Origin: Macrostomum lignano
Lineage: Eukaryota
Length of the DNA stretch: 64,000 nt
NCBI GenBank assembly: GCA_002269645.1
Contig: NIVC01002509.1
Coordinates: 1 to 64,000, forward strand
Reading direction: 5' to 3'
The translations under genes and the position numbers were made by a program. The notes below the pieces were generated by a model. That model did not search any database and was not told where the DNA came from. It was given only the letters and a program-made list of their open reading frames with translations. Shown in pieces: positions 1 through 63,259 of the stretch; within the stretch, counting starts at the first letter, position 1; the number at the start of each line of letters is the position of its first letter.

Positions 1-44
1 TCATTTGACTCCATGTCCTGTCATATGACTTCATATGATCTCCT

Positions 45-945
45 TAATCCCTGTCACTTCTCATCTCACTAATCCCTTACACTCTGATCTCCTTAATCCT
101 TGTCACTTTCATCTCACTAATCCCTGTCACTCTCATCTCACTAATCCCTGTCACACTCATCTCACTAATCCCTGTCACACTGATCTCACTAATCCCTGTC
201 ACTCTGATCTCACTAATTCCTGTCACTCTGATCTCCTTAATCCCTGTCACTCTGTTCTCACTAATCCCTGTCACTCTGATCTCACTAATCCCTGTCACTC
301 TGATCTCCCTAATCCCTGTCACTCTGATCTCACTAATCGCTGTCACACTGATCTCCTAATCCCTGTCACACTGATCTCCCTAATCCTGTCACTCTGATCT
401 CACTAATCCCTGTCACACTGATCTCCCTAATCCCTGTCACTCTGACTCCCTAATCCCTGTCACTCTGATCTCCCTAATCCCTATCACTCTGATCTCCCTA
501 ATCCCTGCCACTCTGATCTCACTAATCCCTGTCACTCTGATCTCCCTAATCCCTGTCACACTGATCTCCCTAATCCCTGTCACTCTGATCTCCCTAATCC
601 CTGTCACTCTGATCTCCCTAATCCCTGTCACTCTGACTCCCTAATCCCTGTCACTCACTGATCTCCCTAATCCCTGTCACTACTCTGACTCCCTAATCCC
701 TGTCACTCTGACTCCCTAATCCCTGTCACTCTGATCTCCTTAATCCCTGTCACTCTGATCTCACTAATCCCTGTCACTCTGATCTCCCTAATCCCTGTCA
801 CTCTGATCTCCCTAATCCCTGTCACTCTGATCTCACTAATCCCTGTCACTCTGATCTCACTAATCCCTGTCACTCTGATCTCCCTAATCCCTGTCACTCT
901 GACTCCCTAATCCCTGACAGTCTGACTCCCTAATCCCTGTCACTC
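45..945. repeat. 24-bp minisatellite (CTAATCCCTGTCACTCTGATCTCC), ~37 copies
   Basis: Period of 24 read directly; produces spurious 8-aa-repeat ORFs. Confidence 0.95.
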
Positions 946-1026
946 TGTACCTCTGTCCCTGTACCCGCCCTGTCACTCTGTCCCTGTACCCGCCCGAAAG
1001 ACAAGAGAAAGAAAGCAAGAACTCAC

Positions 1027-1111
1027 GAATTTCAGGTACAGAAACATTCTTTGACAGCCGTTTGTGACCTTGTCTGTAGGCTCTGTAATCTTCTGTAGGC
1101 GATTTGCCAAC
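1027..1111 (-). CDS. RIMBP2: RIMBP downstream internal exon (VGKSPTEDYRAYRQGHKRLSKNVSVPEI); gene continues beyond window start
   Basis: TTATTCCAG acceptor with a long T tract, GTGAGT donor, 85 nt, phase 0/1; phase-compatible with the donor at 4619. Confidence 0.7.
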
Positions 1112-1292
1112 CTGGAATAAAAAAAAACAATTTCATATAATATCAAATAAATGAAATGAAATGAAATAACTAAATTAAACAGGACAAGAAAAGTAAATCA
1201 CTGAACAACACCAAGTAGAAAAACGAATTATAAGAATAAAAATGACTACAAGCCAACCAACGCCACACTGAAGCCGTCACCATGATAGAAAA

Positions 1293-1298
1293 TTTATT
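1293..1298 (-). terminator. Candidate AATAAA polyadenylation signal for the alternative terminal exon
   Basis: AATAAA ~55 nt downstream of TGA 1351, followed by T-rich sequence on the minus strand. Confidence 0.5.
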
Positions 1299-1350
1299 TA
1301 TCAAGTGCCATAAAACAGGTTCCTTGCCACCTCAACACGAAAGCTCCACC

Positions 1351-3648
1351 TCAGCTGGAGCCTTCGCCTCCTCCGGCGAGGTTCTTCGGGTCCAGCTTCT
1401 TGAACATGCTCGCCGTGCCCTCGCCGAACGCTTCAAATCTCTTCTTGGTGTCCCCACACGAAGGCGTCGAACTTTTTCTTAGTATCCTCGTTGAACGCTG
1501 CGAATTTCTTTTTATTTTCCTCGTTGAAGGCTTCGAAATTTTTTCGATTCTCCTCGTTCGCTTCGCGGATCTTTTCGCCCGTCTCATCGGCGATTTCCTC
1601 CACTTTTTCTTGGAATTCGTGGAAGCCTTTCTTTAGCCGGCCTAAGAAGCTCGAGTCCTCGGGATCGTTGGGATCGCCTTCGCACCTTCAACACCTTCGG
1701 CACCTTCAGCACCTTCGGCACCTTCAGCGCCTTCAGCAGCCGCAGCTTCAGCAGCCGCAGCTTCAGCAGCCGCAGCTTCAGCAGCCGCAGCTTCAGCAGC
1801 CGCAGCTTCAGCAGCCGCAGCTTCAGCAGCCGCAGCTTCAGCAGCCGCAGCTTCAGCAGCCGCAGCTTCAGCGGCCGCAGCTTCAGCAGCCACAGCTTCA
1901 GCAGCCGCAGCTTCAGCGGCCGCAGCTTCAGCAGCCACGGCAGCCTCCTCTTCAGGCGTTGGCAGGGGTTCACCCCTAGGGCCCCGCTGCCTACCCTCGG
2001 CCGCTTCGTCGACTGTCCGACCAAACTCGTCCAACAGTTCCCCGCCGGGTCCTCGGACAACCTGTCCGGTGGATTTGTCTTCGAGCACGCCGAACTCGTT
2101 GACCCGCCAGCCGCACTCGGAGGCCAGCAGATGACCGCTCGCCGGGTCGCGAGGCGCGCCGCACACCGGGCGACACCGAGCGTCGAAGTAGCGACCCTGG
2201 GCGTCTCTCAACGGCGCCCCGGTTGAGGCGTCGACCAGCAGGCCGAATTCGTTCTCGCGTCTTTCTGCCGAGTCAATAACGGCTTGACTGTCGGCGTCAA
2301 CAAGCTGCTGCTCGTCGGCCAGACAGACTTTCCGGCAAGCCAGCGGCCGACCTCCGGCGTCGAGCAGCTCACCGTTTGGCCCAAGCACGGGCTGCCCGGT
2401 GTCCGAGCTGGTCAGCACTCCGAGCTCGTTCGGCTCGGCCGGCGACACCAGACTGCCGTCCGGGCGGCGGACTCCGTGCACCGGACGACAATCGGAGTCG
2501 AAAAACTCGCCGGACGGACCTCGGACTGGCCGGCCGGACTCGTCCAGCAGGACGCCATTGTCGTTGACGCCGCCAGTTGGCAGCGGCGTGCCAGTCGACG
2601 TGTTCAACAGTCGGCCAGTGGACGCATCAAGCCGGGCCCGGCGACAATCGATTGGCCGGCCGGACGGGTCGAGCAGCTGGCCGTCCGGCCCCGGCTCGCT
2701 CAGCACGCCGTAGTAGTTCGGCTGCTGGGCCTCGTCGTCGACCAGCTGGCCGTTCGGCAGCCGCCGGCCGTAAACGACGGCGCCGTCGGGAGGGCCATAA
2801 AATTCTCCGTTTAGTCCGCGAAGCGGCAGCCCGCGCGAGTCGGCCAGCACGTTGAACTCGTTGGCCACGGCGTCGGCCACTTCGTCCGGCGAGTCAACAC
2901 GACGACAGGCGATTTCGGCTGCCGTTGCGTCCAATAGTTCGCGTCCGGTCGGCCCGGACAGTGGCCGGTTGTCTGTCCCGGACACTAACACGCCGAAGTA
3001 GTTGAGCTTTGGAGGCGGGTCGTCTGGCTTGCACGCCAGCAGACGGCCATCGTCGGGATGTCGGAGGCCGCCGAGAGCGGGCCGGCCGTCGGCACCAAAG
3101 AACTCGCCGCGGCTGCCTCGCAGCGGCACGGAGCCGACAGTCAGGATGCCGTGTGAGTTCGCCGCGGCCTCGGGAAACGCGTCCAACGGAGCAGCACCGT
3201 CCGGGACTGGCCGGCAGGCGATCGGCCGACCGTCCGAGTCGATTAGAGTGCCGTCTGGTCGGGTGAGAGCCAGGCCGGTGTCCAGATTAGCCAGGACGCC
3301 GAACCAGTTGACGGCGGGCGGCGGGTCGCCCAGCAGCTCGCCGTCGGGGCCGCGCGGCCCGTAGACCGGCTGGCCGTTGGAGGAGAAAAACTCGCCAGAC
3401 TGGCCTCGGATCGGGACGCCGTTTTCGTCGATTAGCACGCCGTTAGCGTTGACGCTTGTAGCGTCGCCGAAGGTCGTAGAATTATTAAATCCGTTAGACT
3501 CCGGTACAAGACGGCCGTCCGGGGTTCGAGTCGCGATTCGACAAAGTATGGGAGCGCCGTCTGGCGGAGATCGGAATTCGCCGCTCGGAGTTCGCAGCGG
3601 CTGACCGGTTGAGGGATCAACCAGGATGCCGAATTCGTTGGTTTGGGC
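1351..3648 (-). CDS. Large putative alternative terminal exon: unrecognised G/P/D-rich repeat domain, (AAAAE)n spacer, 11-mer amphipathic repeats, stop
   Basis: Phase-0 acceptor CCCCTTGTGTCAG at 3649; no Met codon in the 671-aa ORF apart from the TTG pseudo-start; GC-rich coding bias. Frame continues across 1-nt shifts at ~1681 and ~1456 to TGA at 1351. Confidence 0.75.
1690..1945 (-). repeat. Coding tandem repeat: 15-bp (AAAAE)n followed by 9-bp (GAE)n
   Basis: GGCTGCTGAAGCTGC-type unit repeated ~13-14 times inside the large exon. Confidence 0.92.
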
Positions 3649-3789
3649 CTGACACAAGGGGCGCGCATGCGGTAGTGGTGGTGGTGGTGGAAGGGTGCTG
3701 GTTTAATAGTGCAAGCTGTGCTTTGATTGACAGGCACGGAATAACGATGCTTCGCATATTTTTATGTGCAAAGGAGGATAAAAAGTTTA

Positions 3790-4350
3790 CAGGGCAGGGA
3801 TATAGGACAGGGAAACTATGGGTAGGAGTTGGGGTGGGTGTTTTATACACCCAGAGGAGGCTATAGTGTACATTAGGGCAGGAAAACTAAGGGTAGGAGT
3901 TGGGGTGGGTGTTTTATTCACCCAGAGGAGGCTATAGTGTACATTAGGGCAGGAAAACTAAGGGTAGGAGTTGGGGTGGGTGTTTTATTCACCCAGAGGA
4001 GGCTATAGTGTACATTAGGGCAGGCAAACTAAGGGTAGGAGTTTGGGTGGGTGTTTTATTCACCCAGAGGAGGCTATAGTGTACATTAGGGCAGGCAAAC
4101 TAAAGGTAGGAGTTGGGGTGGGTGTTTTATACACCCAGAGGAGGCTACAGTGTATATTAGGGCAGGAACAGCGAAGCTAGGAGTTGGGGTGGGTGTTTAA
4201 TACACTCAGAGGGAGGCTACAGAGTAAATTGGGGCAGGAAAATTGAGGGTAGAAGTTGGGGTGGGTGTTTTTTACACCCAGAGGAGGCTACAGTGTACAT
4301 TAGGGCAGGAAAACTGAGGGTAGGAGTTGGCTGGGTGTCTTATAGAACCT
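3790..4350. repeat. 71-bp minisatellite, ~8 copies
   Basis: CCCAGAGGAGGCTATAGTG… recurs at 3850, 3921, 3992 and onward. Confidence 0.9.
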
Positions 4351-4619
4351 GAGGAAGTTTTACCTACATGTAATAAGTAACGATATTGGCTAAACTCTAA
4401 AGAGTTAGCAGGTTAGTATATATACATAAAATGTTACTTATAGAAAACGTTTAAATAGCACAATCTACAACAAAATAAACGAGAGTAAGTTGATATCTTT
4501 TGTAAAGTTAAGACACAATCTATACAACATCAAAAGGCTACCACAGACACGTGAGAAAGGAAAAATCACTACGGATTCTAAGAAAGCTAAAATTGCTGCC
4601 AAATTGGTCTAGGCGTTAC

Positions 4620-5213
4620 CCTCGGATTGCGCGACGCGGACAACAGGTGCTGCCTGCGCAATCGATGGAATTTCGATGGACTAACGCTGCGACTTCGAAT
4701 CATTCGGTGGTCCATCAGGGCTGAGGTGTTCGAGGCGGCGGCGGCGGCGGCAGCTCCTCGCCTACTGGAGCGATGATGCTGGGAATGAGGCTGGCGCAGG
4801 CTGCCATGCTGAGGCCAGTCATCCTGCTGCTGCACCAGCTGCTGATGATGAGGCGGCAGCTGCCAGTCATCAAAGGAGGCCTGCATCTGCAGCTGCCTGT
4901 AACCGCCGCCGCCGCCAACAGGGTTGGCATTGTCGTACATGGAGGCGGGACCTGCAACGCCGTCGTTGGGATGACGAAGCAGGCCGCCCTGCTGCTGCTG
5001 CTGATGGTGATAAGCTTGATTATAACCGGCATGAACACCTGTTGGCGACCCGGTTAGATGAGGCGGCATACCAGCGGTTCTACTGAACCTGGACGACGGG
5101 CCAAGATTCAAAGGCCTACCAGACGTGGAAAGTCTTTGTTGTTGCTGCTGCTGTTGTTGTTGCAGGAGCAGAAGTTGCTGCTGTTGCTGCTTTCCGAAAG
5201 CCAGATGACGCTG
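4620..5213 (-). CDS. RIMBP2: RIMBP Gln/His-rich low-complexity exon
   Basis: Open frame QRHLAFGKQQQ…SASRNPR; tandem CAGCAG acceptor (start 5213 or 5210); GTAACG donor; phase 0/0. Confidence 0.75.
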
Positions 5214-5749
5214 CTGTTTTTTTTGTTTAAAACAACGGCATTTGTTTGGCGTTGTAGGATTTGAGGTTTATGGGATTTGGGGATTTAAAGGGAACAGGGT
5301 GGGTGAGAAAAAGAATTATTTTTATCCCTTTTAGAAGCTCTTGTAAAATAAAAAGTAAAAGTAGTTTTAGTTCAAAGGAAGCAACGTCGCATATCGCCCA
5401 TAAACCATAGGAGACCTATAGTTGCAAGATTACGAGTATTAGGATTAAGAATCTCTGTGAATTCCAACATGCCGATAAAGTTACGAGTAATAAATAATTA
5501 TGAATTAGCCTAAAAAAGCAAATTTTCTAAAATAAACGATTTTTTATGTATGATGCGCAATTGCGGCACGATGGTTTTAAATAAAATTGACTTTCGATAC
5601 ATATCGGTACAACGAGAAAACTCTTTTTTTCGATGGTTAAGTTTTAAAAAATGCAATAATGACTTAGAATCGAGGCAATAGAAATTCTTTAATTTCGATA
5701 GAAATTAAGTCATTTATAAACAATCCTTTCTCCGATACATACCAGGAAG

Positions 5750-5941: not shown

Positions 5942-6385
5942 ATCTTCTGGCCTAGGCAAATCGATAGACGAATTAGCGGCAGACAGAGTCAGCGAGCACG
6001 GCGGGTCCGAGTCTAAACTCTCCACAGTCTGACCATTGTGAGTACCGACTGTGCGCACGGTCAGGAAGGCGGTGTGAGGTGGCAGGGAGTTCTGGGCGAG
6101 CAGGCAGTGATCTGAGTACGCGTCCAAGCACTCCGTGACCCGGTGCCTGCCGTCAGCGTACACTGCGTAGCCGGTGACCCGAACACCGTTGGACACGCCG
6201 TCGGAGTTGGCAACGGTGACCGGTAGCCAGGTGACTAGCAGGGAATGGTCCTGAGGCCCGGGCTCGATTTGAACGTCCAGAGGAGCGTCGGGCAGGCCGC
6301 CGGGCGTGGTTCGAAACTCCAAGGTGGCGGTGAGGAGAGGCACGGAGGTGCCCGTAGTTTTCGGAGGCCTGGCCCGCACGCACAC
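5942..6385 (-). CDS. RIMBP2: RIMBP end of FN3-2 and FN3-3 (PDAPLDVQIEPGPQDHSLLVTWLPV…SNGVRVTGYAVYADG…ESLDS)
   Basis: Strong match to the RIMBP third FN3 pattern; (CT)n pyrimidine tract plus CAG acceptor; GTAAGT donor; 444 nt, phase 0/0. Confidence 0.95.
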
Positions 6386-10320: not shown

Positions 10321-10462
10321 CTGCCGTGTAAATAGAAAGAGATTATATTTATAAGCATGATTTTAGATGTGTGCTAAACATTCGTTCCATTTGGATTTGG
10401 GGAGCTTATGTAAGCGTTTGGTTGATTTTAGGATAAACATAAGAGATCATTTAAGTCCTAAT

Positions 10463-11330
10463 TACCTCTGGGATCTGGGACTATTTGAGTCTTAAGTACC
10501 TCTGGGATCTGGGACTATTTGAGTCTTAAGTACCTCTGGGATCTGGAACTTTTTGAATCTTAATTACCTCTGGGATCTGGGACTATTTGAGTCTTAAGTA
10601 CCTCTGGGATCTGGGACTATTTGAGTCTTGAGTACCTCTGGGATCTGGGACTATTTGAGTCTTAAGTACCTCTGGGATCTGGGACTATTTGAGTCTTAAG
10701 TACCTCTGGGATCTGGAACTTTTTGAATCTTAATTACCTCTGGGATCTGGGACTATTTGAGTCTTGAGTACCTCTGGGATCTGGGACGATTTGAGTCTTA
10801 AGTACCTCTGGGATATGGAACTTTTTGAATCTTAATTACCTCTGGGATCTGGGACTATTTGAGTCTTAAGTATCTCTGGGATATGGAACTTTTTGAATCT
10901 TAATTACCTCTGGGATCTGGGACTATTTGAGTCTTGAGTACCTCTGGGATCTGGGACGATTTGAGTCTTAAGTACCTCTGGGATATGTGACTCTTTGAGT
11001 CTTAATTACCTCTGGGATGTGGGACTAGTTGAGTCTTAATTACCTCTGGGATATGGGACTCTTTGCGTCTTAAATACCTCTGGGATCTGAGACTATTTGA
11101 GTCTTAAATACCTCTGGGATCAGAGACTATTTGAGTCTTAATTAGCTCTGGGATCTGAGACTATTTGAGTCTTAATTACCTCTGGGATCTGAGACTATTT
11201 GAGTCTTAATTACCTCTGGGATCTGAGACTATTTGAGTCTTAATTACCTCTGGGATCTGAGACTATTTGAGTCTTAATTACCTCTGGGATCAGAGACTAT
11301 TTGAGTCTTAATTACCTCTGGGATCTGATA
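10463..11330. repeat. 34-bp minisatellite (ACCTCTGGGATCTGGGACTATTTGAGTCTTAAGT), ~25 copies
   Basis: Period of 34 read directly. Confidence 0.95.
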
Positions 11331-18635: not shown

Positions 18636-19879
18636 GATGCAGTGAAGCAGTGTATGGAACAAAATAAGGTCATCGTGAACGGGGCAGCGAAATGAGCCGC
18701 GAGCAAGCAGAAGCCCCAGTTTACTCAGATGAGAAGCGGGCACGTGCGCAGATACAGCAGGCAGGCGCCCAGATCAAGTATGATGATACACAGCGCCCGC
18801 AAAAACCTACTCAAGCATCGATAGCTCCGTCTGACCAATTTTTTTTCTCTCTCTCTCTCGCCCCCCCCCACCCACACCCATTGCAGCCTCCCGGGACTGA
18901 AACTACATCAAGGACATTCGTTGTCGCATTCTAAATTATGCATAGAGAATCAACATCCAGTGGTGGCGGGGGGGGGGGTTGCTGGGCTAGCAACAGTGGC
19001 CGGCAAGGCCTGACAGCCAGACGGTTTAAACAGCCGATAGCTTAAGCCCAGGGAAACGAATGACCAGGAAGCACCGGGCGTAGAGAAAATTGAAAGATAA
19101 ATCTTCCAACAGCTAGGCGCAATGTCATGTGAGAACGAGAGGGATCGCGCGGCTCGCAGGGGACACAAGTCGGCATGGGGATCGAGGGAGTAAAGAGGGA
19201 AGAAAGCTGTGCAGAAATCGAATATCAGCCTCTAGCAAAGCGACATCTTGTCTTAGTGTTTCTGCATCTGTCCTTCCGTCTCCGGGAGGATATTTGGAAA
19301 AACTACAGTCACATGAATCTCCAGCTCTGAAGACTGGCCGACAGATTGCTTGGCTTACAACATTGGAGATGGCATATCTAGCATTGTGATCCGTCAGAAC
19401 TGGGAACCAGAGGGGTGACAGTCGGACAGAACTGGACAAGAAGAGCATTCATGTAGTTGATGGGGCATGATGGAGAAAGAGGATCTGATTTACAGACCTG
19501 AGCTTCTGAAAGACTCAAGGTGAGGGAGTGAGACAGACGAGAAGGGAAGAGAGCAGCTGAGAGCAGTGTTTACTGCCTGGCCTGAGCTCAGAGACTGCGC
19601 ACGCTGCTCAGATGGCCAAAAAGGAAGGCAGCGTGACAGGTGACTCGGGGTCAGTGTGGCATTCTAAATAGCAAGGCCAGACATTTTGACTTTCTGAGTT
19701 CCGACAGTCAGATCTAATTGTAAGACAGTTCAGCTTTTCAGAAAATATTATTATCATAAATTTTAAAACTACTTTCTCACAATCAGAAGATAGAAGCTCT
19801 AAAAAACTATGTAGCCGTAGCTGTGGGAAATATATTCGGAAACGGCATGCCCAACAACTAAGGAAATACTTCATCCTTT

Positions 19880-20280
19880 GCCTCTCCTCCCTCCTGCCCT
19901 TCCCTGCCTCTCCTCCTGCCCCTCCCTGCCTCTCCCTGCCCCTCCCTGCCTCTCCCTGCCTCCCCTCCTGCCCCTCCCTGCCTCTCCCTGCCTCTCCCTG
20001 CCCCTCCCTGCCTCCCCTCCTGCCCCTCCTCCTGCCCCTCCCTGCCTCCCCTCCTGCCCCTCCCTGCCCCTCCCTGCCTCTCCCTGCCTCCCCTCCTTGC
20101 CTCCCCTCCTGCCCCTCCCTGCCCCTCCCTGCCTCCCCTCCTGCCCCTCCCTGCCCCTCCCTGCCTCCCCTCCTGCCCCTCCCTGCCTCCCCTCCTGCCC
20201 CTCCCTGCCCCTCCCTGCCTCCCCCTCCTGCCCCTCCCTGCCCCTCCCTGCCTCCCCCTCCTGCCCCTCTCTCCCTACCT
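19880..20280. repeat. C-rich 12-16-bp repeat (CCCCTCCCTGCCT); G-rich on the minus strand
   Basis: Direct inspection. Confidence 0.92.
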
Positions 20281-21090
20281 TCCTCTCTGCTCTTCCCGCT
20301 TTTTCTGTCCCCCATTCGTCCATGCCTGCTGTATATTGTACATAAATCTCACCCTTCATCTCCTCCTATGCCTCTTCTCACCCCTTTCTCCTCTCCTTCC
20401 TCAATCATTCCTTTATCCTCACCACCACCTGTCCTCTTAGCCTTTGTTTGCTCTCCTGTCTCTATCCACACCAGGCGCGACCTCCCGCAGAGCCCAATTA
20501 GCATAATGATGAAGGGTGGCTCTCAGCTGCCGCAGTAGCCGTAAAAAAGCAACTGTCTTTTTAAAAAATTAAAAGAAAAGTTTTTGCTCCCTGGAGTGTG
20601 AAAATTTGGGCGATAGTGAAAAACGTTAAAGCACTTTCCGTTTCCCCAGGGTCTCAGCTCAGGCTAAGTAAAGCAACTTAAACTTATTATATAAAAAGAA
20701 TCGCACATTCATTTTCGTAATGGCAGTTCACCATCTCTCACTAACAGACCTTCAGCCAATTTGAAATCAAAGCCGTATGTAAAAAGCATGAGGAGTTCAT
20801 AATAAATTAGGAAATAGCCATCACCCAAACTTAACAGCAAAAGGCTTAAGAAAATCTTTTGGCTATAATAATTATTTCTAACCTCTCTTTACTCTTTGCG
20901 AACCTGCTAGTCATGCCTTAATCGTGATACTGATCGACATAATTACCAAAATTTTAGGGGCTTAGAATCGAAATCTCAAACTGCAAAGAAGATTTTAATT
21001 TAGAATTTTTCTCTTTTCAATATCTAATGAGACAGAAATTTCTTTCTGTTCCTCTAGAAGAAGCGCGTCTTGAGCAGAAACGGCGGCTAC

Positions 21091-21195
21091 CTTCTTCATA
21101 TAGAATGACTCGCGAGATTTCTCGTCAATCAGGTGTTTTAAACGCGCGTGCTCGGACTCCAGCTCGCGTTTCTTCTCGAGCGACTCGCGCATGTG
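21091..21195 (-). CDS. RIMBP2: RIMBP coding exon (HMRESLEKKRELESEHARLKHLIDEKSRESFYMKK)
   Basis: TTTTTAG acceptor, which is also the edge of the 43 bp array; 105 nt, phase 0/0; donor GTAGCC is weak. Confidence 0.7.
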
Positions 21196-21975
21196 CTAAA
21201 AATATAATTTTAAATGGTGACTCATTATATAATGGTAGCTAAAAATAGAATTTTAAATGGTGACTCATCATATAATGGTAGCTAAAAATAGAATTTTAAA
21301 TGGTGACTCATTATATAATGGTAGCTAAAAATATAATTTTAAATGGTGACTATTATATAATGGTAGCTAAAAATAGAATTTTAAATGGTGACTCATTATA
21401 TAATGGTAGCTAAAAATAGAATTTTAAATGGTGACTCATCATATAATGGTAGCTAAAAAAAGAATTTTAAATGGTGACTATTATATAATGGTAGCTAAAA
21501 ATATAATTTTAAATGGTGACTCATTATATAATGGTAGCTAAAAATATAATTTTAAATGGTGACTCATTATATAATGGTAGCTAAAAATAGAATTTTAAAT
21601 GGTGACTCATTATATAATGGTAGCTAAAAATAGAATTTTAAATGGTGACTATTATATAATGGTAGCTAAAAATAGAATTTTAAATGGTGACTCATTATAT
21701 AATGGTAGCTAAAAATAGAATTTTAAATGGTGACTCATCATATAATGGTAGCTAAAAATAGAATTTTAAATGGTGACTATTATATAATGGTAGCTAAAAA
21801 TATAATTTTAAATGGTGACTCATTATATAATGGTAGCTAAAAATATAATTTTAAATGGTGACTATTATATAATGGTGGCTAAAAATAGAATTTTAAATGG
21901 TGACTCATTATATAATGGTAGCTAAAAATAGAATTTTAAATGGTGACTCATAATATAATGGTAGCTAAAAATAGA
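21196..21975. repeat. 43-bp AT-rich minisatellite (CTAAAAATAGAATTTTAAATGGTGACTCATTATATAATGGTAG), 18 copies
   Basis: Period of 43 (42 in the TGACTATT variant). Confidence 0.95.
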
Positions 21976-22345
21976 ACGGCGGGTGATTAGTCACCGCGAA
22001 ATGATCTAAAAGTCAGCAACTGTTTATAATGGACGTCGCTAAAGGAAGGAAAGCGATTTTTAGGATAATTTAGCAACTATCACCTTGTCGATGTTCTAAT
22101 TTTCATCATATTGAAGAAAATTTTGGCGCTAAAATCTTATATTAGAAATAACTAAGAGATAACAACTTTGGGGACGATTTTAGGGTCATAACTTCGGGGA
22201 TAACTTACGATCACGGCTTAGGGAATAATTTATGGATCATAACTTTGAGGATAACTTAGGGGTCACGACTTTGGGAATAATTTAGGGTTCACAGCTTTGG
22301 AATAAGGAAGAGGGCTGCAACAAACTAAGCAACCAGCCGACTCAC

Positions 22346-22701: not shown

Positions 22702-22869
22702 CTGAAAATTAACGGTTTGTCAGATTGAGAATTGAAACACTCGGGTGTGTAGGCCTAGGCATAGTAAACGTTCCTCGAATATTTAAAAGGTTTGGGATAA
22801 ATAAATGGCAAAGAACCGAAGGTCATTTTAGGATAATTCACGAATAACCAGGTTCGGGATAGCTGAAGG

Positions 22870-23900
22870 AGATAAAATCCCAGAGAATCTTTTTTGGGGA
22901 TAACTGAAGGGGATAATATCCCAGGAATCATTTTTAGAGATAACTGAAGGGGATAAAATCCCAGGAATCATTTTTAGAGATAACTGAAGGGGATAAAATC
23001 CCAGGAATCATTTTTAGAGATAACTGAAGGGGATAAAATCTCAGGAATCTTTTTTAGGGTGACTGGAGGGGATAAAATTCCATGAATCATTTTTGGGGAT
23101 AACTGAAGGGGATAATATACCATCAATCAGTTTTGGGGATAACTGAAGGGGATGATATCCCATGAATCATTTTTGGGGATAACTGAAGGGGATAATATAC
23201 CATCAATCAGTTTTGGGGGTAACTGAAGGGGATAATATCCCATGAATCATTTTTGGGGATAACTGAAGGGGATAATATACCATCAATCAGTTTTGGGGAT
23301 AACTGAAGGGGATGATATCCCATGAATCATTTTTGGGGATAACTGAAGGGGATAATATACCATCAATCAGTTTTGGGGTAACTGAAGGGGATAATATCCC
23401 ATGAATCATTTTTGGGGATAACTGAAGGGGATAATATACCATCAATCAGTTTTGGGGATAACTGAAGGGGATGATATCCCATGAATCATTTTTGGGGATA
23501 ACTGAAGGGGATAATATACCATCAATCAGTTTTGGGGATAACTGAAGGGGATGATATCCCATGAATCATTTTTGGGGATAACTGAAGGGGATAATATACC
23601 ATCAATCAGTTTTGGGGGTAACTGAAGGGGATAATATCCCATGAATCATTTTTGGGGATAACTGAAGGGGATAATATCCCATGAATCATTTTTGGGGATA
23701 ACTGAAGGGGATAATATCCCATGAATCATTTTTGGGGATAACTGAAGGGGATAATATCCCATGAATCATTTCTGGGGATAACTGAAGGGGATAATATACC
23801 ATCAATCAGTTTTGGGGATAACTGAAGGGGATAATATCCCATGAATCATTTTTGGGGATAACTGAAGGGGATGATATCCCATGAATCATTTTTGGGGTAA
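22870..23900. repeat. 40-bp minisatellite with alternating variants (80-bp higher-order unit)
   Basis: GGGGATAACTGAAGGGGAT core with alternating ATACCATCAATCAG and ATCCCATGAATCAT. Confidence 0.93.
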
Positions 23901-24194
23901 CATGCGGGGATAATTAAAGCGGATTCCTTCAGAAGTCAAGATTATGGGAAAAAATATTAAAGAAAATGTACAAAAAACAGCAAATCAATAGAGAAGACAA
24001 ACCAAATCAGTCTGGGCGGTGTGCTCTTCTTGAAGCTGAGATTTTAGCTGCTCATTCTCGCCAGACAAAGCCGCGAGACTGCTTTCCTGAAGAAGAGAAG
24101 GGAAGCGAGGGGAGCACTGGTTACACAAGGACATTTAATGTCTGCAGAGTGCAGATGGATGTAATAAACAGCATGGGATGATGGGGCCGCGCAG

Positions 24195-24669: not shown

Positions 24670-25620
24670 TCTCTATATTAGATCTCAATCCTATATATCC
24701 AAGATGTCTATCCTAGATGTCGATCCTCTCTATCCTAGATATCTATTCTCTCTATCCTAGATATCTATCCTCTCTATCCTAGATATCTATTCTCTCTATC
24801 CTAGATATCTATCCTCTCTATCCTAGATATCTATCCTCTCTATCCTAGATATCTATCCTCTCTATCCTAGATATCTATCCTCTCTATCTTAGATATCTAT
24901 CGTCTCTATCCTAGATATCTATCCTCTCGATTCTATATGTCTTTTCCTTTCCATCCTAGATGTATATTCTCTCCACCATAGATGTATATTCTCTCCATCC
25001 TAGATGTATATTCTCTCCATCCTAGATATATATTCTCTCCATCCTAGATGTATATTCTCTCCATCCTAGATATATATTCTCTCCATCCTAGATATATATT
25101 CTCTCCATCTTAGATATATATTCTCTCCATCCTAGATATATATTCTATCCATCCTAGATATATATTCTCTCCATCCTAGATATATATTCTCTCCATCCTA
25201 GATATACATTCTCTCCATCCTAGATATATATTCTCTCCATCCTAGATATACATTCTCTCCATCCTAGATATACATTCTCTCCATCCTAGATATATATTCT
25301 CTCCATCCTAGATATATATTCTCTCCATCCTAGATATATATTCTCTCCATCCTAGATATATATTCTCTCCATCCTAGATATATATTCTCTCCATCCTAGA
25401 TATATATTCTCTCCATCCTAGATATACATTCTCTCCATCCTAGATATATATTCTCTCCATCCTAGATATACATTCTCTCCATCCTAGATATATATTCTCT
25501 CCATCCTAGATATATATTCTCTCCATCCTAGATATATATTCTCTCCATCCTAGATATATATTCTCTCCATCCTAGATGCATTTTCTCTCCATCCTAGATG
25601 TATATTTTCTGCATTACCGA
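24670..25620. repeat. 22-bp minisatellite (TCCTAGATATATATTCTCTCCA), ~40 copies
   Basis: Direct inspection. Confidence 0.95.
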
Positions 25621-25962: not shown

Positions 25963-27089
25963 CTTATGAGTTTTTTAGGGCAACAGAGAATAGCGCTTTG
26001 ATAACAGAATGAAACAGTTAAACTACAATTGTTTCCTGTTGTTAGGACGCAAATTCTATACTGGATTAAATAATAAAATGCACACGCACTAAGCTCAGAG
26101 CAGCTAAGAGCTCAGAGGGGGTGGGTACTTGGATTGGGAGTAAATTGGATAGGGAAAGAATGGGAAGAGAGGAATGATGGGGTTGCTGCTCTGCGATGGG
26201 GAGACTGAGAATACGCAGCAAGCCAAGCCTCCTTTCGCGTACGCAAGCAACTGTACTGCAAGGTGGCTCAAAAGCAGGCTGCTCTCTCAGTTGCAGACTC
26301 AGGCCGACTGTACATTCATTCTCCGCACCCACCTCAGCGAGAGGGGAAGAGAGGGGGGAGAGGAGCAGGGAAGGGAGAGTCTGGAGAGCCCGATCAATCA
26401 ATACATTTGGTATAGAAAGTGGGGGAGAGAGGAGAGGATAGGGCAAGGCGATTTGAGAAGGCGGTTCTAGAATACTCGTAGAACTCTGAGCTCACTCCCT
26501 CCCTCCCTGCTTGGCCCCTAGCCAAAAGGCTCAGCCAAGCGGTTAGTGGCTTCCCAACCGGCAGCAGCAGCAGGCCGTGTGGAGTCTCAAGGCGAGCTTT
26601 TCTTGGCCGGGGTAAAAGTTGGGAATTAGCACGGGGGGGGCTGTAGGAGGATGGGGTGAAGAAAGTTCACACTACAGGAGGCGCACGAGCATCTCGGAGA
26701 CTAGGATGGGGAGGCCGGAGAGGCTGAGGGGAGAGAAAAAAGGGGGGAGGCCGAAAACGGTGGCAGACAGAGATATTCCCTAACCATAATCCCCAATGCG
26801 GAGCGCTCTCCCTATTCCCCCTGGGAGCAGAGTTGTGTATAGAAATGAATGGGAAGGCGATTCCAAGCCTTTGCAGATGCCCAGATTAGCTTTAACCCGG
26901 CCTGAAATCCCTCTTCAAACACATCTCGAAATCCCCTTAGATAGCGCCACAGAGAAGGGTATTGGTTTCCAAATTTTCAAATCATTTAAATAGAAATTAA
27001 AACAAATATAAAATCCGATTACGCGTGTACATATTTAGCAGACTTAAGCTAATGACTGTTTGAGTTTGAGATCAACAAATAAAAAGCAA

Positions 27090-28260
27090 ATGAATCTCAA
27101 AATGAAAATGGCACTCCCCAATATCTAGTGGCAAATTTATCTCAAAATGAAAATGGCACTCGCCAATATCTAGTGGCAAATGTACCTCAAAATGAAAATG
27201 GCACTCGCCAATATCTAGTAGCAAATGTACCTCAAAATGAAAATGGCACTCGCCATTATCTAGTGGCAAATGTATTTCAAAATGAAAATGGCACTCGCCA
27301 ATATCTAGTGGCAAATGTATCTCAAAATGAAAATGGCACTGCCAGTGTCTGCCACTATCTAGTGACAAATCTATCTCAAAATGAAAATGGCACTGCCAGT
27401 GTCTGCCACTATTTAGTGGCAAATGTATTTCAAAATGAAAATGGCACTCGCCAATATCTAGTGGCAAATGTATCTCAAAATGAAAATGGCACTGCCAGTG
27501 TCTGCCACTATCTAGTGACAAATCTATCTTAAAATGAAAATGGCACTGCCAGTGTCTGCCACTATCTAGTGGCAAATGTATCTCAAAATGAAAATGGCAC
27601 TCGCCAATATCTAGTGGCAAATGTATCTCAAAATGAAAATGGCACTGCCAGTGTCTGCCACTATCTAGTGGCAAATGTATCTCAAAATGAAAATGGCACT
27701 CGCCAATATCTAGTGGCAAATTTATCTCAAAACGAAAATGGCACTCGCCAGTATCTAGTGGCAAATGTATCTCAAAATGAAAATGGCACTCGCCCATATC
27801 TAGTGGCAAATTTATCTCAAAATGAAAATGGCACTCGCCAATATCTAGTGGCAAATTTATCTCAAAACGAAAATGGCACTCGCCAGTATCTAGTGGCAAA
27901 TGTATCTCAAAATGAAAATGGCACTCGCCAATAGCTAGTGGCAAATGTATCTCAAAATGAAAATGGCACTCGCCAATATCTAGTGGCAAATGTATCTCAA
28001 AATGAAAATGGCACTCGCCATTATCTAGTGGCAAATGTATCTCAAAATGAAAATGGCACTCGCCATTATCTAGTGGCAAATGTATCTCAAAATGAAAATG
28101 GCACTCGCCAATATCTAGTGGCAAATGTATCTCAAAATGAAAATGGCACTCGCCAATATCTAGTGGCAAATGTATCTTAAAATGAAAATGGCACTGCCAG
28201 TGTCTGCCACTATCTAGTGGCAAATGAGTCTCAAATGGCACTGCCACTATCTAGTGACAA
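27090..28260. repeat. 45/54-bp minisatellite (TATCTAGTGGCAAATGTATCTCAAAATGAAAATGGCACTCGCCAA)
   Basis: 15-aa periodic ORFs on both strands; the 54-bp variant carries GCCAGTGTCT. Confidence 0.95.
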
Positions 28261-29959: not shown

Positions 29960-31255
29960 GCGACTGAGATGGGATTCGGTTAGGATTGAGATAGAATTCA
30001 AAGTAGACTGAGATGGGATTCTGACGGGACTGCGACAGGACTATAGGATGTGACTAAAATAGGGCTGAGATTAGACTGAGATAGGATTATGATGGGATTG
30101 AGAAGTGACTATAGAATGTGACTGAGATGGGACCGAAGTGGGGTTGAGATGGGATTGAGAAGTGACTATAGAATGTGACTGAGATGGGACCGAAGTGGGA
30201 TTAAGATGGGACTATAGAATGTGACTGAGATAGGACTGAGATGGTACTGAGATAAGATTGAGATGGGACTATAGAATGTAACTGAGATGGTACTGAGATG
30301 GGATTGAGATGGGACTATAGAATGTGACTGAGATAGGACTGAGATGGGACTGAGATGGGATTGAGATGGGACTATAGAATGTGACTGAGATAGGACTGAG
30401 ATGGGATTGAGATGGGATTGAGATGGGACTATAGAATGTGACTGAGATAAGACCATAAGATGAGACTAGATAGGATATAAGATGAGACTAGATGGGACTA
30501 TAAGATGCGACTGGGATGGGACTATAAGATGAGACTAGATGGAACTATAAGATGAGACTGAGATGGAACTATAAGATGAGACTAGATGGGACTATAAGAT
30601 GGAACAGAGATGGGACTATGAGATGAGACTTAGACAGGACTATAAGATGGAACAGAGATGGGACTATGAGATGAGACTTAGACAGGACTATAAGATGGAA
30701 CAGAGATGGGACTATGAGATGAGACTAGACAGAACTATAAGATGAGACTAGATGGAACCATAAGATGAGACTAGATGGAACCATACGATGAGACTAGATG
30801 GGACTACATGTATAAGATGAGACTAGATGGGACCCTACGATGAGACTAGATGGGACTCTAAGATGAGACTAGATGGGACTCTAAGATGAGACTAGATGGG
30901 ACTCTAAGATGAGACTAGATGGGACTAAAAGATGAGACTAGATGGAACTATAAGATGAGACTAGATGCGACTATAAGATGGAACTGAGATGGGACCATGA
31001 GATGAGACTAGATGGAACCATAAGATGAGACTAGATGGAACCATACGATGAGACTAGATGGGACTACATGTATAAGATGAGACTAGATGGGAATCTAAGA
31101 TGAGACTAGATGGGACTCTAAGATGAGACTAGATGGGACTAAAAGATGAGACTAGATGGAACTATAAGATGAGACTAGATGCGACTATAAGATGGAACTG
31201 AGATGGGACCATGAGATGAGACTAGACAGGACTATAAGATGAGACTGAGATGGTC
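29960..31255. repeat. GA-rich minisatellite field, ~10-23-bp units (GATGAGACTAGATGGGACTATAA)
   Basis: Direct inspection; unit type changes gradually along the array. Confidence 0.92.
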
Positions 31256-32864: not shown

Positions 32865-33600
32865 CGACTGCAACTGACATAAGCGCCTACCTTTCAGCTG
32901 ACTGCAACTGACATAAGCGTCTACCTGTCAGCTGACTGCAACTGACATAAGCGCCTACCTTTCAGCTGACTGCAACTGATATAAGCGCCTACCTTTCAGC
33001 TGACTGCAACTGACATAAGCGTCTACCTGTCAGCTGACTGCAACTGACATAAGCGCCTATCCTTCAGCTGACTGCAACTGACATAAGCGCCCATCCTTCA
33101 GCTGACTGCATCTGACATAAGCGCCTATCCTTCAGCTGACTGCATCTGACATAAGCGCCTATCCTTCAGCTGACTGCAACTGACATAAGCGCCTATCCTT
33201 CAGCTGACTGCAACTGACATAAGCGCCTATCCTTCAGCTGACTGCATCTGACATAAGCGCCTATCCTTCAGCTTACTGCAACTGACATAAGCGCCTATCC
33301 TTCAGCTGACTGCAACTGACATAAGCGCCCATCCTTCAGCTGACTGCATCTGACATAAGCGCCTATCCTTCAGCTGACTGCATCTGACATAAGCGCCTAT
33401 CCTTCAGCTTACTGCAACTGACATAAGCGCCTATCCTTCAGCTGACTGCAACTGACATAAGCGCCTATCCTTCAGCTTACTGCAACTGACATAAGCGCCT
33501 ATCCTTCAGCTGACTGCAACTGACATAAGCGCCTATCCTTCAGCTGACTGCAACTGACATAAGCGCCTATCCTTCAGCTTACTGCAACTGACATAAGCGC
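32865..33600. repeat. 34-bp minisatellite (CTGACTGCAACTGACATAAGCGCCTATCCTTCAG), ~21 copies
   Basis: Period of 34; head-to-tail with no spacers. Confidence 0.95.
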
Positions 33601-50719: not shown

Positions 50720-51138
50720 AGATCAGCTCTGGCGCATTCGAGAAGATGTGCGTCCTATTCAACATAGCTGCACTGCAGACTCAGGTGGCCGGTCAGCAGA
50801 ACTCGGACGATGCCGGTCTGCAAGCCTGCGCAAAATTTTTTCGCCAAGCCGCTGGCGCATTGGGCTACGTCAAGGACAATGCAACAGTTCTGTGCGGCCG
50901 AGAACTCAGCTCGGACATGAGCTCGGACGCCCTGTCCGCAATGATATCGCTGTGCTTGGCCCAGGCGCAGGAGACTGTGTACAGGAAGGCGGCTAAGGAT
51001 CGAATGAAATCGGCTATGGTGGCCAAGATTGCTATGTACGCTGCCGATCTGTACTCGGATACGCTGCGCTGTATGCAATTGTCAAGCGTGAAGTCTATGT
51101 GGCCGAAGGATTGGCTCAATGTTGTCGCCGCTAAACAG
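50720..51138 (+). CDS. PDCD6IP: ALIX exon 4 (FEKMCVLFNIAAL…KDWLNVVAAKQ)
   Basis: BRO1 core (EKxCVLFN, LAQAQE, AKIA); CCCGCAG acceptor, GTTGGT donor; phase 1/0. Confidence 0.95.
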
Positions 51139-51292
51139 GTTGGTTGCTTTTGTAGAAATCGTAAAAAGTTTTTTTAAATGATTTTTTTTACTTTTTTCAT
51201 AAATTCGTTTGATATTCGGCTGCAAGGCATTCTTGAAAAAATTATCTCAACTATACTACATTTTTTAAGAAGCAGATTACAAGAATCACTCC

Positions 51293-62080: not shown

Positions 62081-62305
62081 GCTGGCTTCCACGCGGTGGC
62101 CGAATTCTACCAAGCCGAGACCTGCGGCGAGGCCAGGAAATTCGGCGAGCAAATTGCCCGTCTGCAGCACTCTGACCAGCTGTTCAAAGAGTCGGACAAG
62201 CGGTCCGGCAGCTCCACCCAGATGCCGTTCAAAGCCGAGTGGACTAAGGCTAAGAAAGTTTTGGAGACTGTTGAGAAAGATAATAATACTATCTATCACG
62301 AGCAG
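62081..62305 (+). CDS. PDCD6IP: ALIX exon 5 (AGFHAVAEFYQA…EKDNNTIYHEQ)
   Basis: BRO1 C-terminal KDN-x-x-IYH motif; CCCCTTAG acceptor, GTAAGC donor; 225 nt, phase 0/0. Confidence 0.95.
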
Positions 62306-62354
62306 GTAAGCCCTCGAATGCTTCATAACCTCACGTAAAATCTAGAATAGGACG

Positions 62355-63162: not shown

Positions 63163-63259
63163 GTGAGAATTTTGTCTGTTGTGAGATTCCTGCGATGCTT
63201 TTTTAGTAAAGACTCGTAACTTTTTTCGTCTGATGCTTTTCCGTCAGAGGTGTGAGATT

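What the first reader, a model, noticed from the sequence alone, without database searches (positions are those of the whole stretch)
1351..1680. Hidden C-terminal 11-residue amphipathic repeat (synuclein/apolipoprotein/LEA-like periodicity)
Seen, but missing from the ORF track because of two frameshifts: EGDPNDPEDSSFLGRLKKGFHEFQEKVEEIADETGEKIREA, then NEENRKNFEAF / NEENKKKFAAF / NEDTKKKFDAF / VGDTKKRFEAF / GEGTASMFKKL, then DPKNLAGGGEGSS-stop. Correcting the +1 at ~1456 restores exact 11-residue spacing of the F-x-x-F motif. Established: 11-mer (11/3) amphipathic helices with Lys at the interface bind curved or anionic membranes in alpha-synuclein, apolipoproteins, perilipins and group-3 LEA proteins. 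Inference: a vesicle- or lipid-binding tail on an active-zone protein in an animal lineage not known to have synucleins.
Basis: partly seen in the sequence, partly recalled or inferred. Interest (0 to 1): 0.72.

Follow-up and report, generated by a model that had tools for sequence, protein, structure and literature searches.

The report
Amphipathic 11-residue repeat tail, frame-broken
The last exon attached to an invertebrate RIM-binding-protein gene ends in a real, roughly 88-residue helix with a greasy stripe repeating every 11 residues, but two single-base frame breaks and the absence of relatives or transcripts leave it unproven that the tail is made or binds membranes.

Summary
This gives eight 11-residue rows with hydrophobic residues at positions 8 and 11, a hydrophobic-moment peak at 98 degrees, and one predicted helix (residues 12-95, pLDDT above 90 in the core).

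Codon-position GC, TTC usage and mostly third-position variation between the 33-nt units all fit a protein-coding history in the corrected frames. Three upstream rows that are not repeat copies keep the same hydrophobic direction (p = 2e-4), so the stripe is more than a by-product of a minisatellite.

The host gene is RIM-BP: the FN3 exons hit Ig_RIMBP2 at 3.7e-30, and the splice phases fit. The tail sits on an orphan 2-kb exon of 11 'NEFGVL' repeats. No SH3-II/III exons follow in the window, so this is probably an alternative last exon.

The resemblance to apolipoproteins is a matter of pattern, not descent, because the reversed sequence scores higher. About 5 kb of other coding sequence in the window shows no frameshift, so the two indels may be real.

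Lipid or vesicle binding is inference only. I score interest as modest.

The parts
1457..1681 (-). Tail segment A (75 codons): EGDPNDPEDSSFLG linker, three non-repeat amphipathic rows, then 11-mer units NEENRKNFEAF / NEENKKKFAAF / NEDTKKKFDAF and the first codon (GTG, Val) of the next unit. It is shifted by one base from the frame of the upstream ORF.
   Evidence: no stop in 75 codons; GC by codon position 0.55/0.25/0.64 in this frame. One search gives the unit sequences.
1681..1682 (-). Frameshift 1: one base missing at the junction GGTGC|GAAGG. The last unit of the 9-nt GAAGGTGCY array is 8 nt long.
1450..1459 (-). Frameshift 2: one extra base in GTGTGGGGAC (T1456 or one G of 1452-1455). It breaks an otherwise exact 33-nt lattice.
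1354..1455 (-). Tail segment B (34 codons): GDTKKRFEAF / GEGTASMFKKL / DPKNLAGGGEGSS, back in the frame of the upstream ORF.
   Evidence: GC3 0.82; moment direction kept across the shift.
1393..1657 (-). The amphipathic helix proper: eight 11-residue rows (88 residues after removing the extra base), from DSSFLGRLKKG to GEGTASMFKKL. Hydrophobic residues are mainly at positions 8 and 11, in places also 1 and 4, with Lys/Arg mainly at 5-7.
   Evidence: AF2 single helix over residues 12-95, mean pLDDT 84.
1351..1353 (-). TGA stop of the corrected reading frame.
1642..1644 (-). TAG stop reached if frameshift 1 is real. The protein would then end ...EGVEGAKAIPTIPRTRAS.
1433..1435 (-). TGA stop reached if only frameshift 2 is real. 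The protein would then end ...KKKFDAFVWGHQEEI.
1293..1298 (-). AATAAA polyadenylation-type hexamer, starting 55 nt after the start of the final TGA.
1677..1936 (-). Simple coding repeats just upstream of the tail: (EAAAA)n from a near-perfect (96% matches) 15-nt array (1731-1936), and (EGA)n from a 9-nt array (1677-1738).
1960..3648 (-). Body of the large terminal exon: 11 tandem repeats of about 45-63 residues ('N-x-F-G-V-L ... R-G-x-x-G-E-F-F ... D-G-R-P-x-x-C-R'). It has no Met and no known domain. The acceptor is tgtcag|GCC at 3648, phase 0.
4620..5213 (-). Q-rich linker exon, phase 0 at both ends (acag|CAG ... AGG|gtaacg).
5942..6385 (-). RIM-BP FN3-III exon (Ig_RIMBP2 domain), phase 0 at both ends.
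   Evidence: (E = 3.7e-30)

Best explanation
Window 1354-1681 (minus strand) is the 3' end of a large, lineage-specific last exon. That exon is spliced, in phase, onto the FN3-III and Q-rich linker exons of a RIM-binding-protein (RIM-BP) gene.

The region encodes, or until very recently encoded, three parts: an acidic Asp/Pro linker, one continuous amphipathic alpha-helix of about 88 residues in 11/3 register, and a short Gly-rich end. The helix has a narrow Phe-(Thr/Asn)-Phe face flanked by Lys, with Glu/Asp opposite. Its last five turns-of-eleven arose from an old 33-nt coding tandem repeat, in a genome that is full of minisatellites.

The assembly carries two single-base indels that break the frame. 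Whether these are consensus errors or real mutations cannot be decided from the sequence. I put the chance that the tail is intact in the animal at roughly even.

The most likely activity of an intact tail is reversible, helix-inducing binding to a lipid surface, in the manner of class-A amphipathic helices. For an active-zone scaffold isoform that surface would be synaptic or transport vesicles.

Shown: the sequence pattern, the coding signature, the helix propensity and the gene context. Inferred: translation, membership of RIM-BP transcripts, and any lipid binding.
For: - Exact peptides and indel positions.
- 11-residue periodicity and a 98-degree moment peak, z = 4.5.
- Class-A-like wheel order F11-T/N4-F8-N1 | K5 ... 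E9 E2 K6 A10 E3 ... K7.
- The moment direction is conserved in the three rows that are not repeat copies (p = 2e-4) and across frameshift 2.
- Coding signature in the corrected frames: GC3 of 0.64 and 0.82 against GC2 of 0.25 and 0.50, matching the gene's GC3 of 0.74, with 11 of 12 Phe codons TTC.
- The 33-nt units are only 64-79% identical, with 2-5 synonymous codon differences in most pairs.
- Variable sites among units 4-7 number 2/6/9 of 11 at codon positions 1/2/3.
- AATAAA lies 55 nt after the stop.
- AF2 gives one helix over residues 12-95, pLDDT above 90 through the core.
- The only weak sequence matches are lipid-surface helical proteins: PF01442 Apolipoprotein E = 4e-4, phasin, YtxH; ApoA-I/A-IV/E in the PDB from E = 0.01.
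- Composition shuffles and column-permuted controls lose the apolipoprotein hit.
- Gene context: Ig_RIMBP2 at E = 3.7e-30 (FN3-III exon) and 5.1e-07 (FN3-I exon); SH3-I upstream; all three junctions phase 0 with GT/AG sites; no Met in the 686-codon ORF, so it must be spliced to upstream exons.
Against: - Two frame-breaking indels lie within 225 nt. In contrast, about 5 kb of other coding sequence in the window shows none: the 2-kb NEFGVL ORF, the Q-rich exon, the FN3 exons and the BRO1/ALIX exons. The A5-A6 runs inside the tail are also in frame. This pattern fits real mutations at least as well as assembly error.
- No homologue of the tail or of its exon was found in 5.8e9 protein clusters, in 1.84e9 representatives searched exhaustively (NEFGVL body only), or in JGI metagenomes.
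- Related RIM-BP loci have SH3-II/III and no such exon.
- Given an 11-residue unit, the moment is only modestly unusual (p = 0.03-0.13).
- The helix has net charge about 0 and mean hydrophobicity about 0, and its N-terminal third is strongly acidic (z of -4 to -6 in 18-residue windows). That is not favourable for binding anionic membranes.
- No transcript, read or experimental data are available.
Confidence: 0.35

Rival explanations
1. The tail is a recently disabled relic. At least one indel is real, so in this genome the protein stops at TAG 1644-1642 (...EGVEGAKAIPTIPRTRAS) and the 11-mer array is now untranslated 3' sequence that has not yet decayed.
For: - Two indels lie in 225 nt, with none in about 5 kb of other coding sequence in the window.
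- Neither indel sits in the long A-runs where long-read consensus errors concentrate.
- Two 1-nt indels with no premature stop in the corrected frames is still compatible with recent neutral decay. My own estimate: about 0.7 stops expected for about 16 substitutions, so P(0) is about 0.5.
- No homologue is known, so there is no evidence of long-term retention.
Against: - The coding signature is still sharp: GC3, TTC bias and third-position variation.
- The amphipathic phase is preserved across the second shift.
- Repeat-rich regions like this are hard to polish, and errors cluster in them.
- The stop and AATAAA follow the corrected frame neatly.
Confidence: 0.35
2. The helix is translated but is a protein-protein module or a self-associating helix. 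Candidates are a hendecad coiled coil, an apolipoprotein-style helical hairpin, or an ER/K-like single alpha-helix spacer. It would not be a lipid binder, and the Phe-x-x-Phe array would dock onto another scaffold protein.
For: - AF2 predicts a stable long helix even without any partner.
- Net charge is about 0 with an acidic N-terminal third.
- It follows a roughly 70-residue (EAAAA)n stretch that should itself be helical, which suggests a rod.
- RIM-BP is a multivalent scaffold whose N-terminal region binds BRP (PMC7337501).
Against: - Only 2 of 11 positions are strongly hydrophobic, and the hendecad e/h positions are Asn/Thr, which is poor for a coiled-coil core.
- The arrangement of Lys at the interface and acid at the centre is the class-A lipid-surface pattern.
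- The weak database matches are all lipid-surface proteins.
Confidence: 0.15
3. The periodicity is a neutral by-product. A 33-nt minisatellite expanded inside a disordered, low-complexity C-terminus, next to 15-nt and 9-nt coding arrays, in a genome saturated with minisatellites. Any 11-residue unit gives a 98-degree Fourier peak, so no specific function is implied.
For: - The window holds more than 20 minisatellite arrays of period 19-71 nt, and the 15-nt and 9-nt coding arrays lie directly upstream.
- The column-permutation control gives p = 0.03-0.13 for eight rows and 0.11-0.29 for the five repeat rows.
- There are no homologues.
Against: - The three rows that are not copies of the unit keep the same moment direction (p = 2e-4).
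- The units have diverged to 64-79% identity, mainly at third codon positions, while keeping K-K-K-F-x-A-F.
Confidence: 0.12
4. Frameshift 1 is not an indel but a 44-nt micro-intron (AAG|GTGCGA...TTCTTAG|G, 1685-1642). Splicing it joins ...EGVEG to RLKKGFHEF in frame. Only frameshift 2 then needs explaining, and the protein would end ...FDAFVWGHQEEI if that shift is real.
For: GT and AG sit at exactly the positions that restore the frame. The exon side of the donor is AAG, and the acceptor is preceded by TTCTT.
Against: - At 44 nt it is far shorter than every intron I could delimit in this window, all of which are at least about 270 nt.
- It is GC-rich, unlike the local introns.
- It reads as good coding sequence (EGDPNDPEDSSFLG, GC3 about 0.7).
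- The same AAG|GTGC motif recurs by construction in every unit of the 9-nt repeat.
Confidence: 0.05

Closest known systems
Exchangeable apolipoproteins (ApoA-I/A-IV/E; Pfam PF01442), class-A amphipathic helices
   Same: Both have tandem 11-residue periodicity, basic residues at the polar/non-polar interface and acidic residues at the centre of the polar face, and a long helix. This is the only family the tail matches at all (PF01442 E = 4e-4; ApoA-I chains E = 0.01).
   Different: - The score is 20 bits against a cut-off of 90, and the reversed tail scores higher (26.6 bits). The match is therefore pattern, not descent.
- There are no Pro punctuations between 22-mers.
- The hydrophobic face is much narrower (Phe-Thr-Phe).
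- There is no signal peptide, and the tail is fused to a cytosolic scaffold.
Alpha-synuclein N-terminal 11-mer repeats (vertebrates)
   Same: Both are 11/3 helices with a narrow, Thr-containing non-polar face flanked by Lys, have about seven repeats, and sit in a presynaptic setting. The synuclein features are from my own knowledge.
   Different: - There is no sequence similarity: no PF01387 hit at E <= 1.
- The consensus is NE[ED][NT]KKKF[EDA]AF, not KTKEGV.
- The face is aromatic rather than Val/Ala.
- The net charge is about 0 rather than positive.
- It is a tail on a large scaffold, not a small free protein.
Perilipin 11-mer / Plin4 33-mer amphipathic repeats
   Same: Both are very long, repetitive, weakly hydrophobic amphipathic helices built from 11/33-residue units encoded by tandem DNA repeats (PMC5889406).
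   Different: There is no Pfam perilipin hit. The tail is Phe- and Lys/Glu-rich rather than Thr/Val/Gly-rich, it is much shorter, and no link to lipid droplets is known.
Complexin C-terminal amphipathic helix (worm, fly, mouse)
   Same: Both involve a presynaptic protein whose C-terminal amphipathic motif is used to reach synaptic-vesicle membranes in invertebrates (PMC5442187). It is the nearest functional precedent for a vesicle-binding helix at an invertebrate active zone.
   Different: The complexin helix is short (about 20-30 residues), non-repetitive and unrelated in sequence.
RIM-binding protein (RIM-BP / Rbp / RIMB-1)
   Same: The upstream exons encode SH3-I and three FN3/Ig_RIMBP2 domains in the canonical order.
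   Different: Canonical RIM-BPs, and the related loci L001 and L004, continue with SH3-II and SH3-III. Here the next coding exons are a Q-rich linker and an orphan 2-kb repeat exon with this tail, and no SH3-II/III lies in the remaining 5.7 kb.

Membership tests
Apolipoprotein A1/A4/E (PF01442) | Sequence match at or above the Pfam gathering score | tested here: not met
   20.4 bits against a cut-off of 90. The reversed sequence gives 26.6 bits, while shuffles give none.
Apolipoprotein A1/A4/E (PF01442) | 11/22-residue amphipathic repeats with class-A charge distribution | tested here: met
   Lag-11 identity is 0.41 and the moment peaks at 98 degrees. Lys sits at wheel positions flanking the Phe face, with Glu/Asp opposite.
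Apolipoprotein A1/A4/E (PF01442) | Proline-punctuated 22-mers; secreted protein with a signal peptide | tested here: not met
   There is no Pro between tail residues 8 and 96. The exon has no Met or signal peptide and is spliced to a cytosolic scaffold gene.
Synuclein (PF01387) | Pfam match / KTKEGV-type 11-mer consensus | tested here: not met
   No hit at E <= 1. The unit consensus is NE[ED][NT]KKKF[EDA]AF.
Synuclein (PF01387) | Disordered in solution, with a helix induced on small anionic vesicles | not testable with these tools
   Only an in-silico helix prediction is available.
Group 3 LEA (PF02987 LEA_4) | Pfam match; Ala/Lys/Thr/Glu-rich 11-mers without aromatic residues | tested here: not met
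   No hit at E <= 1. Each canonical unit (rows 4-7) carries two Phe.
Perilipin (PF03036) | PAT domain / Pfam match with 11-mer region | tested here: not met
   No hit at E <= 1.
RIM-binding protein | Three central FN3 (Ig_RIMBP2) domains preceded by SH3-I | tested here: met
   PF25523 at E = 3.7e-30 and 5.1e-07. tblastn with L001 domains places FN3-I, FN3-II and FN3-III in order at 8174-7848, 6848-6702 and 6322-6128. SH3-like pieces lie at 12130-12080 (E = 0.17) and 10320-10246 (E = 0.002).
RIM-binding protein | Two C-terminal SH3 domains (SH3-II, SH3-III) after the FN3 domains | tested here: inconclusive
   None were found in 1-5700 by tblastn or by reading all three frames. The window ends 1350 nt after the stop, so they may lie further downstream. 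This exon would then be an alternative last exon.
RIM-binding protein | The tail exon is part of the same transcript | not testable with these tools
   Only splice-phase compatibility (all phase 0) and the lack of any Met in the exon support this. No cDNA is available.

The most novel reading that the evidence does not exclude
In this invertebrate lineage a RIM-BP isoform drops the channel- and RIM-binding SH3-II/III pair. In their place it carries an orphan beta-rich repeat domain, an (EAAAA)n helical stalk and an 88-residue synuclein/apolipoprotein-like amphipathic helix. The active-zone scaffold would then hold synaptic vesicles by direct lipid binding. This would be an independent, convergent invention of a presynaptic 11-mer vesicle-binding helix outside vertebrates.
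Probability: 0.1. Interest if true: 0.7.

Novelty: new member of a known kind. Interest (0 to 1): 0.35.

Why it matters
If the tail is expressed and binds vesicles, it would be a convergent, non-homologous counterpart of synuclein-type 11-mer helices, physically attached to an active-zone scaffold. That would give a direct protein-lipid tether between release sites and vesicles, and a natural experiment on how RIM-BP recruits vesicles. If the indels are real, the region is simply a freshly broken, lineage-specific C-terminus. It would then mainly illustrate how coding minisatellites create and lose periodic helices. At present nothing shows expression or function.

Tried and rejected
**Searches for relatives**
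- Word-indexed protein search with the corrected tail and with the NEFGVL exon: no hits.
- Exhaustive HMMER search of 1.84e9 representatives with the NEFGVL exon: only six weak hits, best 2.5e-09. All are unrelated proteins with 'DxxGRLID' or 'GPNGELLGPDGQPL' short repeats, so they are not orthologues.
- JGI metagenome scans for the tail and for the exon: nothing. One search failed because I gave a wrong frame.
- Exact look-up of the 671-aa ORF: not on record, so the source species appears to be absent from the collections.
- tblastn of the tail, exon and Q-rich linker against related RIM-BP loci L001-L004: nothing.

**Other database searches**
- Rfam on the whole window: no hits.
- PDB sequence search of the NEFGVL body: only chance-level hits.

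**Structure**
- AF2 of the NEFGVL body: mean pLDDT 40, unusable, so I did not run a fold search on it.
- Foldseek of the tail helix against the PDB: no matches, as expected for a single helix.

**Readings considered and rejected**
- Homology to apolipoproteins: rejected because the reversed sequence scores higher.
- AP-2/EH/VAP short linear motifs (FxDxF, DPF, NPF, FFAT; motifs recalled from my own knowledge, compared by eye with the tail peptide): none is present in register.
- An intron that would repair frameshift 2: the only GT..AG option is 16 nt long, which is impossible.
Full report
**What is in the sequence.** The feature lies on the minus strand. Three-frame translation of 1760-1300 shows a long ORF (stop-to-stop 3702-1645, 686 codons). 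It ends ...AEGAEGVEGAKAIPTIPRTRAS-TAG at 1644-1642. A second frame reads EGDPNDPEDSSFLGRLKKGFHEFQEKVEEIADETGEKIREANEENRKNFEAFNEENKKKFAAFNEDTKKKFDAFVWGHQEEI-TGA (1435-1433). The first frame then resumes with GDTKKRFEAFGEGTASMFKKLDPKNLAGGGEGSS-TGA (1353-1351).

The first shift is a missing base between 1682 and 1681. The 9-nt array GAAGGTGCY (TRF, 1677-1738) ends in an 8-nt unit, GAAGGTGC. The second shift is one extra base in GTGTGGGGAC (1459-1450). Removing one G of the GGGG run gives VWDTKK. Both repairs restore an exact 33-nt lattice.

**Is the periodicity more than chance?** Written in rows of 11, the corrected tail reads:
- DSSFLGRLKKG
- FHEFQEKVEEI
- ADETGEKIREA
- NEENRKNFEAF
- NEENKKKFAAF
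- NEDTKKKFDAF
- VGDTKKRFEAF
- GEGTASMFKKL

Residue identity at lag 11 is 0.41, against roughly 0.01-0.19 at the other lags tested up to 24 (0.29 at lag 22). The hydrophobic moment of the 84-residue core peaks sharply at 98 degrees (0.34-0.35). That is the 11/3 angle. It gives z = 4.5 against 5000 composition shuffles, none of which reached it.

On an 11/3 wheel the order is F11, T/N4, F8, N1 | K5, E/D9, E2, K6, A10, E/D3, K7. This is a narrow Phe-Thr/Asn-Phe face flanked by Lys, with acids opposite: the class-A arrangement.

Once an 11-residue unit is repeated, some Fourier power at 98 degrees is automatic. Random re-ordering of the eleven columns reaches the observed moment in 3% (Fauchere-Pliska scale) to 13% (Eisenberg scale) of trials. 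For the five repeat rows alone the figures are 11-29%. So the repeat units alone are weak evidence of design.

The three upstream rows tip the balance. They are not DNA copies of the unit, yet their moments are 0.42-0.61 and point within about 30-40 degrees of the repeat rows (p = 2e-4 by shuffling). Rows 7 and 8, beyond the second frameshift, also stay in phase. There is therefore one continuous amphipathic stripe over about 88 residues.

AlphaFold2 without an alignment gives a single helix over residues 12-95. Mean pLDDT is 84, above 90 through the core.

**Is it coding?** Several lines fit a protein-coding history in the corrected frames:
- GC by codon position is 0.55/0.25/0.64 in segment A and 0.53/0.50/0.82 in segment B. 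This matches the GC3-rich habit of the gene (0.74 in the upstream exon). The other frames of segment A carry 2-3 stops, and 11 of 12 Phe codons are TTC.
- The 33-nt units are only 64-79% identical. Most pairs differ by 2-5 synonymous codons while keeping K-K-K-F-x-A-F.
- Among units 4-7, the variable sites number 2, 6 and 9 of 11 at codon positions 1, 2 and 3.
- An AATAAA hexamer lies 55 nt after the final TGA.

Everything else that is clearly coding in the window is free of frameshifts: the 2-kb repeat exon, the 594-nt Q-rich exon, the FN3 exons and the BRO1/ALIX exons, about 5 kb in all. The A5-A6 runs inside the tail, where long-read consensus errors usually fall, are in frame. Under a uniform error rate, two errors in 225 nt would be surprising.

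On the other side, errors do cluster in repeat-dense regions that are hard to polish. The coding signature is also still crisp, and no stop has yet appeared in the corrected frames.

A 44-nt GT..AG interval (1685-1642, AAG|GTGCGA...TTCTTAG|G) would also repair the first shift by splicing. However, it is GC-rich, it reads as good coding sequence, and it is far shorter than any intron I could delimit here (at least about 270 nt). I give it about 5%. No splice can repair the second shift.

My estimate is roughly even odds that the full tail is intact in the animal.

**What gene is it on?** Upstream on the same strand:
- 5942-6385 hits Ig_RIMBP2 at E = 3.7e-30, and 7818-8246 hits it at 5.1e-07.
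- The closest named protein is a Schistocerca 'RIMS-binding protein 2-like', at 50% identity.
- tblastn with the domains of a related metagenome locus places FN3-I, FN3-II and FN3-III in order. SH3-like pieces lie upstream at about 12130-12080 (E = 0.17) and 10320-10246 (E = 0.002).

The junctions are all phase 0 with GT/AG sites...LPRPED|gtaagt at 5942, then acag|QRHLAFGKQQQ at 5213...RNPR|gtaacg at 4620, then tgtcag|AQTNEFGIL at 3648. The 686-codon ORF contains no Met at all, so it must be an internal or terminal exon of a spliced transcript.

So 'active-zone protein' is supported at the level of gene structure. But the canonical SH3-II/III pair is missing from the 5.7 kb downstream of FN3-III. 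The two related loci I could fetch (L001, L004) have FN3, SH3-II and SH3-III within 3 kb, and tblastn found neither this exon nor the tail in any of the four fetched loci, L001-L004. The simplest reading is an alternative last exon, with SH3-II/III beyond the start of the window, which lies only 1350 nt past the stop.

**The exon that carries the tail.** Its body (1960-3648) is 11 tandem repeats of about 45-63 residues. The motif is N-x-F-G-V-L ... R-G-x-x-G-E-F-F ... D-G-R-P-x-x-C-R. After it come about 70 residues of (EAAAA)n, then (EGA)n, then the acidic DP linker and the helix.

The body has no Pfam domain, no PDB relative and no orthologue in an exhaustive HMMER search of 1.84e9 representatives. 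The six weak hits there are unrelated short-repeat proteins. AF2 gave pLDDT 40.

**Comparison with known families.** The tail's best Pfam hit is Apolipoprotein PF01442 (E = 4e-4, 20 bits against a cut-off of 90). The next are a phasin, V-ATPase G and YtxH. The best PDB sequence hits are ApoA-I, ApoA-IV and ApoE, from E = 0.01.

As a control I scanned five composition shuffles and three column-permuted versions; all lose the apolipoprotein hit. The reversed sequence, however, hits it better (5.8e-06, 26.6 bits). The match therefore reports the amphipathic pattern, not common descent.

There is no synuclein, LEA_4 or perilipin hit at E <= 1. The tail is thus not a member of any of these families, but it belongs to the same structural kind. 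Functional precedents exist for amphipathic C-terminal motifs that reach synaptic vesicles in invertebrates (complexin, PMC5442187). Precedents also exist for very long repetitive 11/33-mer helices that coat lipid surfaces (Plin4, PMC5889406).

**Mechanism and confidence.** I consider it most likely that the tail is, or recently was, a lipid-surface-binding amphipathic helix at the tip of a helical stalk on a RIM-BP isoform. Overall confidence is about 0.35.

Points against strong membrane affinity are a net charge near zero, a mean hydrophobicity near zero and a strongly acidic first third. The rivals are:
- a recently broken relic (0.35);
- a protein-protein or self-association helix (0.15);
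- a neutral by-product of a minisatellite (0.12);
- the micro-intron variant (0.05).

**Verdict.** It is a new, non-homologous example of a known structural kind. It sits in an interesting gene, but without evidence of expression, conservation or function, and with a real chance that the tail is dead in this genome. Interest is 0.35.

Noticed in passing
window 1960-3648 (-): An orphan domain: 11 tandem repeats of about 45-63 residues (N-x-F-G-V-L ... R-G-x-x-G-E-F-F ... D-G-R-P-x-x-C-R), about one Cys per repeat, in a 686-codon ORF with no Met. It has no Pfam or PDB match and no orthologue in 1.84e9 representatives. AF2 gave pLDDT 40.
   Followed up: partly
window 1-5700 (-), compared with L001:12209-13416 and L004:7301-8152: The RIM-BP gene in the window has no SH3-II/SH3-III exons downstream of FN3-III, whereas related metagenome loci have both within 3 kb. 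Either they lie beyond the window start or this lineage/isoform lacks them.
   Followed up: partly
window 1731-1936 and 1677-1738 (-): A near-perfect (96% matches) 15-nt coding array giving (EAAAA)n of about 70 residues, followed by a 9-nt array giving (EGA)n. Together with the 33-nt array, that makes three in-frame coding tandem repeats in 600 nt.
   Followed up: partly
window 36-947; 3803-4355; 10449-11327; 21195-21976; 22856-23914; 24710-25614; 27086-28199; 30006-31253; 32866-33600: An exceptional density of minisatellites (period 22-71 nt, 80-96% identity) in the introns and 3' flank of the RIM-BP gene. A 24-nt array starts about 400 nt after the gene's poly(A) signal.
   Followed up: no
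window 50746-51177, ~62100-62360, 62642-63166 (+); array 51291-62003: A plus-strand gene with a BRO1 domain (E = 6.9e-36) and an ALIX V-domain (E = 4.8e-22), so an ALIX/HD-PTP-like protein. One of its introns holds a 10.7-kb array of about 418 copies of a 26-nt unit at 97% identity.
   Followed up: partly
window 19611-20348 (-): A 246-codon open frame of Gly/Arg/Glu/Gln-rich repeats (GREGQGGAGGEAGRGR...) coincides with a 22/42/86-nt C/T-rich tandem array. It is probably non-coding repeat DNA rather than an exon.
   Followed up: no
window 1400-1636 (+): The antisense strand of the tail carries a 78-codon Leu/Phe-rich ORF (MNMLAVPSPN...FLEFVEAFL). It is a mirror artefact of the periodic sense strand, not a gene.
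   Followed up: no
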